A stretch of 64,000 nucleotides of DNA from Zootoca vivipara (taxonomy: Eukaryota): the NCBI RefSeq assembly GCF_963506605.1, contig NC_083280.1, positions 51,026,001 through 51,090,000 of the forward strand, given 5' to 3'. Below, one piece after another: positions 11,202-53,216 of the stretch (position 1 is its first letter; the number at the start of each line of letters is the position of its first letter). The position numbers and the translations under genes are program-made. A model generated the notes under the pieces. The model made no database searches and had not been told where the DNA came from. It worked only from the letters and a program-made list of their open reading frames with translations.

Positions 11202-11625
11202 TGTGAGGGACAGGGGATATCGCGAAGTCCCTCCCCTCCTGAGTTCAAGCCCATCCCCGAGCGCAGGGGAAAGCAGGGAGAGTTCCGATTCCAGTGGGGA
11301 AGCAGGAAGTCGTGTCCGAGGCTCAGACAAGGTAGCGGAGCTAGGGTCCCAGGTGGGACAGGAAGGGGCAAGCAAGGGGGGCAGACCCATCCCCCCAACT
11401 CCGGAATTGCGCAGAAAGCGGAGAGGGAAGAGGATGGGTCTACCAAAGTTGTTATGTTGGAGAAAAACGCGCCAAACACCATTCAGAGGTTCTGATTCAA
11501 GCTGAGATGTGTCCTTGTAAATAGCATTGCCTTCAGCACTGTAAATACGCAGCACCAATAAAAGATAAAATGCAGAGCTGTGTAGAGTCGTTACTCTGAA
11601 GTAGCCCGCTCCGGCCACTGTGACA
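11202..11625 (+). mobile_element. Solo LTR, copy 1 (424 bp)
   Basis: TG..CA termini (tgtgaggg..ctgtgaca), internal AATAAA, 5-bp TSD gtaag. A second copy lies at 52788-53216. Confidence 0.88.
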
Positions 11626-46059: not shown

Positions 46060-46724
46060 CCCTATATTCTCTGACAACAGAGATACCTCATATCTGGCAA
46101 AGCTAGCTGTTGTCGGTGTTAGCTATGATGAGATACAGTGGTGCAGATTCCTGCTACTTCATACCATCTGTGTGGATTCATTTGATTGCATTGTGCATTA
46201 TCCAGTTGTAGTTTCTTCCATATAACAGTAGCTCTACTTCCCTCAAGTAGGTCAGATGAGAGTGATTTCACTTTCCCCTGGGAATGAGAGGCTCAGTGTG
46301 AATAATCTGTACTGTGATCTCCAATGCACTAACTAGTTGAAAATCCGCTCTTTTAAAATGGGCACTCCTAGGCTAGCTGTTTTTTATCTGAATCCCCAGG
46401 AGCTTCACTGACTTGCAGAAGATTAGAATTGACTCCCCTGCATTAATTGCAGCTTCTTGTTTAAGCAATAGGTGAATGAGCGTTTGATCTCAAAGGTTGT
46501 CATCTCTCTCCAGAGAGAACCGTTATCAAAATGTCACCCGGATAACATCAAATCCAGGCTCCCAGTGGCCTCAGAGGTTAGGAAGGAAAAAGATGAACAG
46601 AACAAGGGGTATACTGAGCTTGCTGTGGTCTTAGAATCATAGAATCATAGAATCATAGAATCATAGAGTTGGAAGAGACCACAAGGGCCATCCAGTCCAA
46701 CCCCCTGCCAAGCAGGAAACACCA

Positions 46725-49646
46725 TCAAAGCATTCCTGACAGATGGCTGTCAAGCCTCTGCTTAAAGACCTCCAAAGAAGGAGACTCCACCACACTCCTT
46801 GGCAGCAAATTCCACTGCCGAACAGCTCTTACTGTCAGGAAGTTCTTCCTAATGTTTAGGTGGAATTTTCTTTCTTGTAGTTTGAATCCGTTGCTCCGTG
46901 TCCGCTTCTCTGGAGCAGCAGAAAACAACCTTTCTCCCTCCTTTATATGACATCCTTTTATATATTTGAACATGGTTATCATATCACCCCTTAACCTTCT
47001 CTTCTCCAGGCTAAACATACCCAGCTCCCTAAGCCGTTCCTCATAAGGCATCGTTTCCAGGCCTTTGACCATTTTGGTTGCCCTCTTCTGGACACGTTCC
47101 AGCTTATCAGTATCCTTCTTGAACTGTGGTGCCCAGAACTGGACACAATACTCCAGGTGAGGTCTGACCAGAGCAGAATACAGTGGTACTATTACTTCCC
47201 TTGATCTAGATGCTATACTCCTATTGATGCAGCCCAGAATTGCATTGGCTTTTTTAGCTGCTGCATCACACTGCTGACTCATGTCAAGTTTGTGGTCAAC
47301 CAAAACTCCTAGATCCTTTTCACATGTACTGCTCTCAAGCCAGGTGTCTCCCATCCTGTATCTGTGCCTTTCATTTTTTTTGCCCAAGTGTAGTACTTTA
47401 CATTTCTCCTTGTTAAAATTCATCTTGTTTGCTTTGGCCCAGTTGTCTAATCTGTTAAGGTCATTCTGAAGTGTGATCCTGTCCTCTGGGGTGTTAGCCA
47501 CCCCTCCCAACTTGGTGTCATCTGCAAACTTGCTCAGGATTCCCTCAAGCCCATCATCCAAGTCATTGATAAAGATGTTGAACAAGACTGGGCCCAAGAC
47601 AGAACCCTGTGGCACCCCACTAGTCACTACTCTCCAGGATGAGGAGGAGCCATTGATGAGCACCCTTTGGGTTCGGTCAGTAAGCCAGCTACAAATCCAC
47701 TGAATGGTAGCATTGTCTAGCCCACATTTTACCAGCTTCTTTACAAGAATATCATGGGGCACCTTGTCAAAGGCCTTGCTGAAATCAAGATAGGCTACAT
47801 CCACAGCGTTCCCTTCATCTACCAGGCTTGTAATTCTGTCAAAAAATGAGATCAGATTAGTCTGACATGACTTATTTTTCAGGAACCCATGCTGACTTTT
47901 AGTGATCACAGAGTTTCTTTCTAGGTGCTCACAGACTGTTTGCTTAATGATCTGCTCTAGAATCTTTCCTGGTATTGATGTCAGGCTGACTGGGCGGTAA
48001 TTGTTTGGGTCCTCTCTTTTCCCCTTTTTGAAAATAGGGACAACATTTGCCCTCCTCCAGTCTGCTGGAACTTCGCCTGTTCTCCAGGAATTTTCAAAGA
48101 TTATTGCCAGTGGTTCTGAAATCACCTCTGCCAGTTCTTTTAATACTCTTGGATGTAGTTCATCTGGCCCTGGAGACTTGAATACATCTAAACTAGCCAA
48201 GTATTCTTGTACTACCTCCTTACTTATTCTGGGCTGTGTTTCCCCTGCTGAATCATCTGCTCCATATTCTTCAGGTCGGGCGTTGTTTTCTTTCTTGGAG
48301 AAGACTGAGGCAAAGAAGGCATTGAGGAGTTCTGCCCTTTCTCTGTCCCCTGTTTGCATTTCACCATCTTCTCCTCTGAGTGACCCCACTGTTTCCTTGT
48401 TTTTCCTTTTGCTACGGACATACCCATAAAAGCCCTTTTTGTTGCTTTTAACCTCTCTGGCGAGCCTGAGTTCATTCTGTGCTTTAGCTTTTCTGACTTT
48501 GTCTCTACACGTGCTGGCTATATGTTTGAATTCCTCTCTGGAGATTTCCCCCCTTTTCCATTTTTTGTACATATCCCTTTTAAATCTTAACTCAGTCAAA
48601 AGTTCTTTAGATAGCCAGCCTGGCTTCTTTAGGCACCTTCCATGTTTCCGTCTCATTGGTATTGCCTGAAGTTGTGCTTTTAATATCTCCCTTTTAACAA
48701 ACTCCCAACCATCATGAACTCCCTTCCCTTTTAGTATTACTGTCCATGGGATTTCACCCAGCTTTTCCCTAAGTTTTCTGAAGTCGGCTTTTTTAAAGTC
48801 TAGAATTTGGACCTTAGTATGCTTGGTTGCTCCTTTCCGCTGGATAATAAACTCCAGAAGAGCATGGTCACTCCCACCTAATGATCCTGCCACTTCTACC
48901 CCACTAACCAAGTCATCACCATTGGTTAGGACCAGATCTAAAATGGCTGATCCTCTTGTTGCTTCTCCCACTTTCTGGACAATGAAGTTGTCTGCAAGGC
49001 CAGTGAGGAATCTGTTCGACCTTATGCTCTTGGCTGAGTTTGACATCCAACAAATATCAGGATAGTTGAAATCCCCCATTACTACTATCTCACTTCCTTT
49101 GGAATGCTTGGCCATCTGTTCCAGGAAGGCATCATCTGTGTCCTCAGTTTGGCTTGGGGATCTATAGTAAACTCCCACAATGAGGTCACTGTTGTTTTTC
49201 TCTCCCTTAATTTTGACCCAGATACTCTCAATTTGGCTTTGAAGTTTTAAATCCTGGATCTCTTCACAGGTATACATATCCCTAACATATAAAGCTACTC
49301 CTCCTCCTTTCCTGTTTGGTCTATTTCTCTTAAATAGATTGTATCCCTCTATTACTACATTCCAGTCATGAGACTCATCCCACCAGGTTTCAGTGATGCC
49401 TATTATGTCATATTTAGTTTGCTGTACCAAGAGCTCAAGTTCATCTTGTTTATTTCCCATGCTCTGTGCATTAGTATACAGACATTGAAGACCGTTGATC
49501 ATTCCCCCATGTCTCTTATTTAAGGATATTTTCGTCCCACCACTAGGTCTGCATGCTGCTTGCTCCATTTGGTCCTTGACATTTGGATGATCATCTTCAG
49601 CATTTGATAGACTCCTACCTTCAGGACCACTGTCTCCCTCCCCCAC
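46725..49646 (-). CDS. CR1 ORF2: APE endonuclease plus reverse transcriptase (start uncertain; the track start is GTG)
   Basis: 973-aa open frame. EN motifs YTNAQS, ITETW, GDFN, LDL, SDH; RT motifs [23 protein letters not shown]. Confidence 0.95.
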
Positions 49647-49651
49647 ATAAG

Positions 49652-50692
49652 TCAGTTTAAAGCCCTCCTGATGAGGTTTTTGAGTTTTGTGGCAAAAACA
49701 TTCCTCCCAACTTTTGTGAGGTGCAGTCCATCACTTGCCAGAAGTCCATCTTCAAGAAACTGCAGACCGTGATCTAGGAATCCAAACCGTTCCTGTTTGC
49801 ACCATTTGCGAAGCCAGTTGTTCACTTCCCCTATTTTTCCCTCTCTCCCTGGGCCATGTCGTTCAACTGGGAGGACAGAAGAGATGACAATTTGTGCATC
49901 TAATTGCTTCAACTTCCTGCCCAGAGCCTCATAATCATTTTTGATCTTCTGTAAGCTATGGCTTGCAGTGTCATTGGTTCCCACATGCACCAAAAGGAAG
50001 GGGTATTTGTCGGTGGGTTTTATGATTCCTTGCAGCCGTTCTGTTACATCTTTGATCTTGGCCCCAGGTAGACAGCACACCTCTCGAGACATCTTGTCAG
50101 GCCCACAGATCACTGCTTCTGTACCCCTCAGTAGGGAATCCCCAATCACCACTACACGCCTCTTCATGGGCTTGGTTGGGATACTTCTATGTGCTGTCCC
50201 TTCCAAGGTTACCTGCATATTTCCAGAGGACTGACTTGGTTGCTCGTCTTCATATTCCTCATCAACTGTGATGAGGGAGAGATCCTCAGGTGGAGTCTGT
50301 TCCTCGTCTTCCATGAGCACTTCAAAACGGTTGTGTAATTCTAAGCACTCAGAGCGATCCCTGGGCCTTCTACTTCTATGAGTCACGTTCCTCCATACAT
50401 CTGGCTGCTGTGTTGGGGAACTGACCTCCTCCTCAGGGAGATCCCCTGTCTCCTCCTTGGTGCAGACAGTGTGCTCTGCTGCATCCAAGAAAAGCTCCAG
50501 TTCTTTAATTCTCTGGAGCGTAGATACACGCCCCTGAAGCTGCTGCACCTTCTCTTCCAGAAGGGCAACCTTGTTTTCTAGTAGGGCAACCAACTTACAA
50601 TTGTTGCAGGTGTAGCTACCCACATCCTTTGGCAAGAAAACAAACATTGCACAGGAATTGCAGGTGACAATGGTTGTTCCCTCCACCTCCAT
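49652..50692 (-). CDS. CR1 ORF1: zinc finger/leucine zipper plus SGNH esterase-like domain
   Basis: CxxC..CxxC, heptad leucines, GDS..HVGTND..DGLH motifs; strong Kozak context aagATGG. Confidence 0.93.
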
Positions 50693-50769
50693 CTTGAAAA
50701 CCTTGAGGTCAAGGGGGAAAGAGGAAGAGGCCTAGGTCCCCCCTAACAAACGTATGAGACTTGCTGCTA

Positions 50770-52487
50770 TCCAAGCTCTGACTAGCTCCGCCCACAGCTA
50801 ATCACCTGAACTTCCTGACTCACACTTCTAGGTGAAAGGTCACAGCCAGAAACAAACAAGGTCACAGCCAGAAACAAACACCCACACAAGCCTGGACAGT
50901 CACCCAAATCCAAGAGGCAGCAGCCCTAGAAAACCAGCACAAGCACACAAACAAGTAAGAAAACAAATAAGCACACAAACTTACTCACACACAGCCCCAA
51001 AAGACAAAACCACAAAACCTACAGAGTGTCTCCCAAGCTCAGCTCACCTTCTGCTCCTTCCTCAGTCACTGCACTCCAAGCTCTGACTAGCTCCGCCCAC
51101 AGCTAATCACCTGAACTTCCTGACTCACACTTCTAGGTGAAAGGTCACAGCCAGAAACAAACAAGGTCACAGCCAGAAACAAACACCCACACAAGCCTGG
51201 ACAGTCACCCAAATCCAAGAGGCAGCAGCCCTAGAAAACCAGCACAAGCACACAAACAAGTAAGAAAACAAATAAGCACACAAACTTACTCACACACAGC
51301 CCCAAAAGACAAAACCACAAAACCTACAGAGTGTCTCCCAAGCTCAGCTCACCTTCTGCTCCTTCCTCAGTCACTGCACTCCAAGCTCTGACTAGCTCCG
51401 CCCACAGCTAATCACCTGAACTTCCTGACTCACACTTCTAGGTGAAAGGTCACAGCCAGAAACAAACAAGGTCACAGCCAGAAACAAACACCCACACAAG
51501 CCTGGACAGTCACCCAAATCCAAGAGGCAGCAGCCCTAGAAAACCAGCACAAGCACACAAACAAGTAAGAAAACAAATAAGCACACAAACTTACTCACAC
51601 ACAGCCCCAAAAGACAAAACCACAAAACCTACAGAGTGTCTCCCAAGCTCAGCTCACCTTCTGCTCCTTCCTCAGTCACTGCACTCCAAGCTCTGACTAG
51701 CTCCGCCCACAGCTAATCACCTGAACTTCCTGACTCACACTTCTAGGTGAAAGGTTACAGCCAGAAACAAACAAGGTCACAGCCAGAAACAAACACCCAC
51801 ACAAGCCTGGACAGTCACCCAAATCCAAGAGGCAGCAGCCCTAGAAAACCAGCACAAGCACACAAACAAGTAAGAAAACAAATAAGCACACAAACTTACT
51901 CACACACAGCCCCAAAAGACAAAACCACAAAACCTACAGAGTGTCTCCCAAGCTCAGCTCACCTTCTGCTCCTTCCTCAGTCACTGCACTCCAAGCTCTG
52001 ACTAGCTCCGCCCACAGCTAATCACCTGAACTTCCTGACTCACACTTCTAGGTGAAAGGTCACAGCCAGAAACAAACAAGGTCACAGCCAGAAACAAACA
52101 CCCACACAAGCCTGGACAGTCACCCAAATCCAAGAGGCAGCAGCCCTAGAAAACCAGCACAAGCACACAAACAAGTAAGAAAACAAATAAGCACACAAAC
52201 TTACTCACACACAGCCCCAAAAGACAAAACCACAAAACCTACAGAGTGTCTCCCAAGCTCAGCTCACCTTCTGCTCCTTCCTCAGTCACTGCACTCCAAG
52301 CTCTGACTAGCTCCGCCCACAGCTAATCACCTGAACTTCCTGACTCACACTTCTAGGTGAAAGGTCACAGCCAGAAACAAACAAGGTCACAGCCAGAAAC
52401 AAACACCCACACAAGCCTGGACAGTCACCCAAATCCAAGAGGCAGCAGCCCTTCTGCTCCTTCCTCAGTCACTGCACTCCAAGCTCT
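50770..52487 (-). repeat. Tandem array in the CR1 5' UTR: five 305-bp units plus one 183-bp internally deleted unit
   Basis: Period 305 (50770, 51075, 51380, 51685, 51990, 52295). The only substitution noticed is C>T at 51756. The terminal unit lacks 122 nt. Confidence 0.97.
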
Positions 52488-52787: not shown

Positions 52788-53216
52788 TGTGAGGGACAGG
52801 GGATATCACGAAGTCCCTCCCCTCCTGAGTTCAAGCCCATCCCCGAGCACAGGGGAAAGCAGAGAGAGTTCCGATTCCAGTGGGGAAGCAGGAAGTCGTG
52901 TCCGAGGCTCAGGCAAGGTAGAGGAGCCAGGGTCCCAGGTGGGACAGGAAGGGGCAAATAAGGGGGGGGAGACCCATCCCCCCAACTCCGGAATTACGCA
53001 GAAAGAGGAGGGGAAAGAGGATGGGTCTGCCAAAGCTTTTGTGTTGGAGAAAGACGCGCCAAAAGCCATTCGGAGGTTCTGAAACCGAATGACCACATCG
53101 CTCCGTGTAAATAGCAATGACTTCAGCACTGTAAATACGCAGCACCAATAAAAGAATAAAATGCAGAGCTGTGTAGCGTCGTTACTCTGAAGTAGCCTGC
53201 TCCGGCCACTGTGACA
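52788..53216 (+). mobile_element. Solo LTR, copy 2 (429 bp)
   Basis: TG..CA termini, AATAAA, 5-bp TSD caggt; colinear with 11202-11625. Confidence 0.88.

What the first reader, a model, noticed from the sequence alone, without database searches (positions are those of the whole stretch)
52305..52487. Spliced intron preserved in DNA: only the 5'-terminal unit of the CR1 5'-UTR array has lost a GT-AG intron
Seen: on the element (minus) strand each full 305-bp unit reads ..agcagAAG|GTGAGC..122 nt..cttAc..ttgtgctggttttCTAG|Ggctgc.. (for example 51047 to 50926). It has a consensus donor, a CTTAC branch-point candidate about 30 nt upstream of the AG, and a U-rich acceptor. The outermost unit reads agcagAAG|Ggctgc (junction 52450/52451), so exactly these 122 nt are missing, while the five inner units keep them. 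Known: LINE copies are made from RNA, so a spliced intron is lost in the new copy; cap-proximal donors are favoured through cap-binding complex/U1. Inference: this CR1 family carries a real spliceosomal intron and keeps it through retrotransposition because only the first donor is used, while downstream units store unspliced spares. The same junction would result from splicing donor 1 to any later acceptor, which would shorten the array. I know of no description of this arrangement in CR1.
Basis: partly seen in the sequence, partly recalled or inferred. Interest (0 to 1): 0.95.

Follow-up and report, generated by a model that had tools for sequence, protein, structure and literature searches.

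The report
Spliced-out intron fossil in CR1 leader
One repeat unit at the head of an intact CR1 jumping gene lacks exactly the 122 bases that look like a normal intron, most likely because a spliced RNA was copied back into DNA, as is already known for human and mouse L1 elements.

Summary
A full-length, ORF-intact CR1 LINE lies on the minus strand (52486-46632). Its 5'UTR has one outer 183-bp unit and five 305-bp units. The outer unit equals the inner ones minus exactly 122 nt. The missing piece is bounded by the best donor in the unit (AAG|GTGAGC) and by the AG with the best pyrimidine tract. About 2% of random deletions fit GT..AG, and about 5e-5 fit it this well.

It is not a one-off. The junction-specific contig has depth 2237 where single-copy depth is about 26. 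That is about 86 copies, or 11% of units. In a second organism the joined and intron-bearing forms are about equal. Six RNA reads carry the junction.

Best reading (about 0.7): a weakly spliced intron was removed from CR1 RNA and fixed by retrotransposition, as in human SpIREs and spliced mouse L1 monomer arrays.

The idea that only the first donor is used and inner units store spares rests on one locus. One RNA read with monomer tail upstream of a joined unit weakens it, as does the 1:1 ratio in organism B.

The scan noted a 1708-letter CR1 array elsewhere in this genome (5x305+183), unchecked. No other assembled copies could be fetched.

The parts
52304..52486 (-). Outermost 183-bp 5'UTR unit. 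It is the 305-bp unit without the 122-nt intron-like piece, with the junction at 52451/52450.
50779..52303 (-). Five 305-bp units, 99.7-100% identical. Each holds the 122-nt GT..AG piece (52267-52146, 51962-51841, 51657-51536, 51352-51231, 51047-50926).
50926..51047 (-). Example intron: AAG|GTGAGC donor, CTTAC with its A at -31, pyrimidine-rich tract and TAG|G acceptor. Reads and contigs skip exactly this piece.
50693..50778 (-). 9-nt partial unit (GAGCTTGGA) followed by the unique leader up to the ORF1 ATG.
49652..50692 (-). ORF1, 346 aa, open. CxxC motifs at the N-terminus and a GDSL-type esterase domain.
46725..49646 (-). ORF2, 973 aa, open. Apurinic-type endonuclease plus reverse transcriptase.
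46632..46703 (-). 3' hairpin (GGUUGGA...UCCAAC) followed by (TGATTCTA)x4.5, the CR1-type 3' end.

Best explanation
The element is a young, full-length CR1-type LINE. Its 5'UTR is a tandem array of 305-bp promoter-like monomers, and each monomer contains a weak but genuine-looking U2-type intron of 122 nt, 36 nt downstream of the unit start. In some CR1 transcripts this intron is removed. Reverse transcription of such an RNA writes the 183-bp exon-exon form into DNA, which is the SpIRE mechanism. The 183-bp unit at this locus records such an event. The event happened either in the RNA that made this insertion or in an ancestor whose array was then copied. Shown here: the exact 122-nt loss, the signal quality, the multi-copy presence of the junction in DNA and its presence in RNA. 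Inferred: that splicing rather than DNA deletion made it, that splicing is inefficient (five of six introns are kept here and about 89% of units genome-wide), and that the copy may stay promoter-competent because the other monomers are untouched.
For: The loss is exactly 122 nt with no other change. It is bounded by the top-scoring donor of the unit (10.8 bits; the next best scores 8.6) and by the AG with the highest pyrimidine fraction (0.71) of 26 AGs. Only 5e-5 of random deletions are as good. A CTTAC branch candidate lies at -31. The orientation matches the element's sense strand; one junction-specific contig in organism A has depth 2237, against about 26 for single-copy contigs and about 18,000 for intron-bearing units. 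In organism B the junction contig has depth 46 and the intron-bearing contig 43.4. The joint is seen in 1 read of X23 and 5 reads (3 starts) of X24, all with the first mate on +, the same direction as most 5'UTR reads. The intron is not a duplicate of the exonic part, so unequal recombination is not a ready alternative. Precedent: SpIREs make up about 2% of full-length L1PA1-6 (PMC5860796). Cryptic donors in mouse L1 monomers are linked to 22 genomic copies (PMC9022269).
Against: Joined units exist in DNA, so the six RNA reads could be plain transcripts of such units. The joined share is high in X24 (5 against a sense intron depth of about 2.4) but low in X23 (1 against about 21). Pooled enrichment over the DNA share of 11% is therefore weak. 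No other assembled copy could be read, so independent recurrence, constancy of the breakpoint and position in the array are unknown. The donor PWM was written from memory and is approximate. Five identical introns stayed unspliced in the same molecule, which needs low splicing efficiency.
Confidence: 0.7

Rival explanations
1. The family maintains a functional intron because only the cap-proximal donor is used (CBC/U1 effect). Every new full-length copy therefore loses just the first intron, and the inner units act as unspliced spares.
For: At this locus the only joined unit is the outermost one, and the insertion begins at the unit start, which gives a 36-nt first exon. A DNA share of about 11% joined units fits roughly one joined unit per array of several units. 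Cap-proximal 5' splice sites are favoured through the cap-binding complex (established knowledge, not tested here).
Against: There is only one array. A joined RNA read in X24 has at least 51 letters on both sides while exon 1 is 36 nt, so monomer tail lies upstream of a joined unit. Organism B has joined and unjoined units at about 1:1. A copy whose first unit is already joined would lose its next intron in the next round, so spares do not explain long-term retention.
Confidence: 0.15
2. A DNA-level deletion by microhomology (AGG) or replication slippage happened once in a source element and was spread by later retrotransposition. The GT..AG ends are coincidence.
For: A 3-nt microhomology sits at the breakpoints. 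Once in DNA the form is heritable, so multi-copy presence does not by itself need splicing.
Against: Only 2% of random deletions fit GT..AG, and 5e-5 match the best donor together with the best acceptor. AG|G microhomology is itself part of the splice consensus. The ends fit the sense strand, not the antisense strand.
Confidence: 0.1
3. The 183-bp form is ancestral. The 122 nt are an insertion (AGG as a 3-nt target duplication) that spread through the array, and the outer unit is an unconverted edge unit.
For: Edge units of tandem arrays often escape homogenisation. In organism B both forms are equally common.
Against: The outer unit is 100% identical to the inner ones over all 183 shared bases, so it is not an older, diverged edge unit. 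The array in a fresh LINE insertion comes from one RNA, not from local array evolution. The insertion model does not explain the splice-signal quality.
Confidence: 0.05

Closest known systems
Human L1 SpIREs (spliced integrated retrotransposed elements; Larson et al. 2018, PMC5860796)
   Same: An intra-5'UTR GT..AG intron is removed from LINE RNA and the spliced form is fixed in DNA. Otherwise the copy is full-length with normal hallmarks. Spliced copies are a minority of the family (about 2% of full-length L1PA1-6).
   Different: The clade is CR1, not L1. The intron sits inside a repeated monomer and only one of six identical introns is gone. The promoter-like module of the unit and five intact units remain, so the copy need not be the promoter-dead end that human SpIREs are (inference). 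The joined share, about 11% of units, is higher.
Mouse L1 Tf_I monomer arrays with cryptic splice sites (PMC9022269, citing Belancio et al. 2006, NAR 34:1512)
   Same: The 5'UTR is a tandem monomer array, donors sit at the same position in successive monomers, and genomic copies (22 in mouse) are attributed to spliced RNAs.
   Different: In mouse the acceptors are reported in monomer 1 and the tether, so splicing removes several monomers. Here donor and acceptor lie within one unit and a short 122-nt intron is removed. Belancio 2006 itself was not held in the library.
Penelope-like elements that retain spliceosomal introns (mentioned in PMC4209133)
   Same: A retroelement family whose genomic copies carry spliceosomal-type introns.
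   Different: It is a different class of element. I did not compare further.

Membership tests
CR1-clade LINE | ORF2 with an apurinic-type endonuclease followed by a reverse transcriptase | tested here: met
   Pfam Exo_endo_phos 1.1e-17 and RVT_1 4.8e-35
CR1-clade LINE | ORF1 with an esterase (GDSL/SGNH-type) domain | tested here: met
   Lipase_GDSL_2 2.4e-09, above the cut-off
CR1-clade LINE | 3' end with a hairpin followed by an 8-nt microsatellite, without poly(A) | tested here: met
   (TGATTCTA)x4.5. The GGUUGGA...UCCAAC stem is in the MFE fold, although its z-score is only -1.3. That this is the CR1 signature is from my own knowledge.
CR1-clade LINE | The RT groups with CR1 in a phylogeny | not tested
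   No tree was built.
SpIRE-type spliced LINE copy | The deletion ends fall exactly on a GT donor and an AG acceptor that are present in unspliced family members | tested here: met
SpIRE-type spliced LINE copy | The copy otherwise has the hallmarks of retrotransposition | tested here: met
   It is full-length from the unit start to the 3' microsatellite and both ORFs are open. No clear target-site duplication was found, which is usual for CR1 (own knowledge).
SpIRE-type spliced LINE copy | The same junction occurs in several independent insertions | tested here: inconclusive
   Junction contig depth is 2237 against about 26 for single copy, and the junction is present in a second organism. No loci could be read, so independent events cannot be told from inheritance.
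SpIRE-type spliced LINE copy | The spliced RNA is detectable | tested here: inconclusive
   Six joined reads in two RNA runs, but DNA copies of the joined form could give the same reads.
U2-type spliceosomal intron | GT..AG ends, donor consensus, branch point and pyrimidine tract | tested here: met
   AAG|GTGAGC, CTTAC at -31, 71% pyrimidines at -20..-4 and TAG|G. The PWM is approximate.
U2-type spliceosomal intron | Removed from transcripts of intron-bearing templates | not testable with these tools
   This needs per-locus long RNA reads or a minigene.
Rodent-L1-style monomer promoter | Tandem monomers upstream of a unique tether, with the insertion starting in monomer phase | tested here: met
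Rodent-L1-style monomer promoter | The monomers drive transcription | not testable with these tools
   There is only a sense-biased read depth over the monomers.

The most novel reading that the evidence does not exclude
This CR1 lineage carries a true, deliberately weak spliceosomal intron in every promoter monomer. Spliced and unspliced monomers co-propagate. Because the promoter modules are redundant, spliced copies stay active, unlike human SpIREs. Splicing, perhaps favoured next to the cap, then acts as a built-in control of array length and expression.
Probability: 0.25. Interest if true: 0.65.

Novelty: new variant of a known kind. Interest (0 to 1): 0.45.

Why it matters
It extends the SpIRE phenomenon from mammalian L1 to a reptile- or bird-type CR1 element, whose 5' ends and transcription are poorly known. 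It also offers a natural test case. The array holds identical introns in series, and only some are removed in the molecules that succeed in retrotransposing. That could show how LINE RNAs escape or tolerate splicing. It could also show whether promoter redundancy rescues spliced copies from being dead ends. For annotation, it warns that 183-bp and 305-bp units are one family.

Tried and rejected
- An exact-pattern scan of metagenome contigs gave five chance matches with unrelated flanks. The scan of genome contigs gave none.
- A protein search used the antisense ORF that crosses the junction. I hoped for called ORFs from other copies that would show what lies upstream of joined units. It found nothing, which shows no absence.
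- The search of earlier findings by sequence was blank.
It was rerun by reference.
- The intron as an internal duplicate of the exonic part was rejected: local alignment scored 22 against shuffles of 20 +/- 3.
- Special RNA structure over exon 1 and the intron was rejected (z = +1.3).
- Belancio 2006 is not held.
- The organism names are coded, and I did not try to uncover them.

Full report
**What is there**

On the minus strand the window holds a complete CR1-type LINE.
- The 5'UTR array spans 52486-50779. It is followed by a 9-nt partial unit and a unique leader.
- ORF1 is 50692-49652 (346 aa). It has CxxC motifs and a GDSL-type esterase domain.
- ORF2 is 49646-46725 (973 aa), with endonuclease and reverse transcriptase.
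- The 3' end has a hairpin and (TGATTCTA)x4.5, ending at 46632.
- These rest. Both ORFs are open.

The five 305-bp units differ by a single base in total, so the copy is young.

**The observation**

Unit 1 (52486-52304) is 183 nt. It equals unit 2 with exactly 122 nt removed and has no other difference. Four cut positions are equivalent because of an AGG microhomology. One of them reads AAG|GTGAGC...TTTTCTAG|GGC.

The junction sequence is unique in the window, and the donor sequence occurs five times.

**Is it more than chance?**

I scored every GT and AG of the unit. I used a donor matrix written from memory, so it is approximate, and the pyrimidine fraction at -20..-4.
- The deleted piece starts at the best donor (10.8 bits; the next best, CAG|GTGATT, scores 8.6).
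- It ends at the AG with the best pyrimidine tract (0.71) among 26 AGs.
- CTTAC lies with its A 31 nt before the intron end.
- Of 81,130 possible deletions of 20-285 nt, 2.0% fit a sense-strand GT..AG, 0.56% fit an antisense one, and only 4 (5e-5) are as good on both sides.

The 122 nt are U/G-rich and are not a diverged duplicate of the exonic part. Homologous recombination inside the unit is therefore not a ready alternative.

**Is it a one-off?**

I laid one unit plus the body of the element (window:46600-51170) on four runs: two raw RNA runs and one contig set of organism A, and one contig set of organism B. A joint that skips exactly 122 nt appears in all four runs. It runs 50924 to 51047 (cut +1) with ends CT..AC on the + strand, which is GT..AG on the element strand.

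*Organism A DNA.* The joint is carried by one short contig with 26 letters on the shorter side.
- That is the size expected for a unitig made only of junction-specific 31-mers, so its depth of 2237 measures the joined form itself.
- Contigs with unique joints have depth 23-28.
- The joined form is therefore present about 86 times.
- Solving the bin sums gives about 18,000 for intron-bearing units. About 11% of units are therefore joined.

*Organism B DNA.* The depths are:
- junction contig: 46;
- intron-bearing contig (50898-51067): 43.4;
- exon-2 contig: 97.2.

The ratio of joined to intron-bearing units is therefore about 1:1.

**RNA**

X23 has 1 joined read. X24 has 5, with 3 different starts. 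All have the first mate on +, as do most reads over the monomers. In the usual stranded protocol this means element-sense RNA, but the convention of this library is not known to me.

Compared with the sense depth over the intron, the joined share is high in X24 (5 against about 2.4) and low in X23 (1 against about 21). Nine of ten intron reads in X23 carry the 51009 variant and so probably come from few loci.

Because joined units exist in DNA, these reads prove that the joined form is in RNA. They do not prove active splicing.

**Position in the array**

In X24 the best joined read has at least 51 letters on both sides of the joint. Exon 1 is only 36 nt (51083-51048). That read therefore runs at least about 11-15 nt into sequence matching the tail of a preceding monomer. 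This is my inference from the tool's definition of 'side'.

The flank at this locus does not resemble that tail. So somewhere a joined unit follows another monomer in the RNA. Either an internal 183-bp unit exists in DNA, or an internal intron was spliced.

At this locus, one joined unit out of six would be the first by chance 1 time in 6. The general claim that only the first donor is used therefore has no support beyond this one array. This read and the 1:1 ratio in organism B both count against it.

The model also has a logical gap. A copy whose first unit is already joined would lose the next intron in the next cycle.

**Mechanism**

The best reading is a SpIRE-type event. A weak intron in the CR1 5'UTR is removed from some transcripts, and the spliced RNA is reverse transcribed. 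I cannot tell whether that happened in the RNA that made this insertion or in an ancestor.

Retention of five identical introns in the same molecule, and of about 89% of units genome-wide, implies low splicing efficiency. Alternatively, unspliced RNA may be used preferentially.

The GC-box and start-site region at the end of each unit lies in the exonic part. The joined unit and the five full units therefore keep it. The copy may remain transcribable, unlike human SpIREs. This is inference.

**What is known**

- Human SpIREs make up about 2% of annotated full-length L1PA1-6. They are described as evolutionary dead ends with reduced promoter activity (PMC5860796).
- For mouse L1 Tf_I, cryptic donors at the cognate position of monomers M8 and M7 and acceptors in M1 and the tether are predicted. 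Twenty-two genomic copies are attributed to such splicing (PMC9022269, citing Belancio 2006).
- My literature searches found no description of this in CR1. The searches were limited.

The kind of event is therefore known. New here are the clade and the arrangement of a short intron wholly inside each monomer, of which one of six is removed.

**Limits**

- Collection scans and a protein search through the antisense ORF gave no other copies.
- The distribution of 183-bp units across arrays is the decisive datum, and I could not get it.
- An earlier, unchecked note of the scan reports a CR1 monomer array of 1708 letters on another piece of this genome. That equals 5x305+183, a lead that the same architecture recurs.

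**Verdict**

A splicing origin is likely (0.7). The cap-proximal 'spare store' model is unproven and somewhat weakened. This is a new variant of a known kind, of moderate interest.

Noticed in passing
window 50767 (X1 loose end; X13 contig 14): In contigs of both organisms the leader continues upstream of 50767 into sequence unlike the monomer. X1 has a loose end there, and X13's leader contig has 26 unaligned letters at the same place. Some family members seem to have a different 5' end joined at the array/leader border.
   Followed up: no
window 51009: A variant inside the intron (A>G on the + strand) holds about 44% of the DNA depth in organism A. It is in 9 of 10 sense reads of X23 but in none of the five units here, so there are at least two monomer subfamilies and a different one is expressed.
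   Followed up: no
window 50731-51170 against 50425-50730: RNA depth over the monomers is 10-20 times that over the leader and the start of ORF1, while the DNA depth ratio is only about 2. Transcripts may end, or be spliced away, soon after the array.
   Followed up: no
each unit, for example window 50805-50797 (27 nt upstream of the next unit start): The second-best donor-like site, CAG|GTGATT (8.6 bits), lies just upstream of the GC box. No joint using it was listed.
   Followed up: partly
X13 contigs 11, 12 and 14: Contigs of organism B match this copy with 2 differences in 1150 nt and 3 in 813 nt. The two organisms are therefore very close relatives, or the subfamily was shared very recently.
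   Followed up: no
window 52788-53216 and 11202-11625: Another interspersed repeat (86-96% identical pieces) lies about 300 nt upstream of the CR1 5' end.
   Followed up: no
window 46799-46844: 38 reads of X24 show a 46-nt 'goes back' joint with 14 extra letters in the CR1 3' region. This is an expressed variant copy with a small duplication.
   Followed up: no
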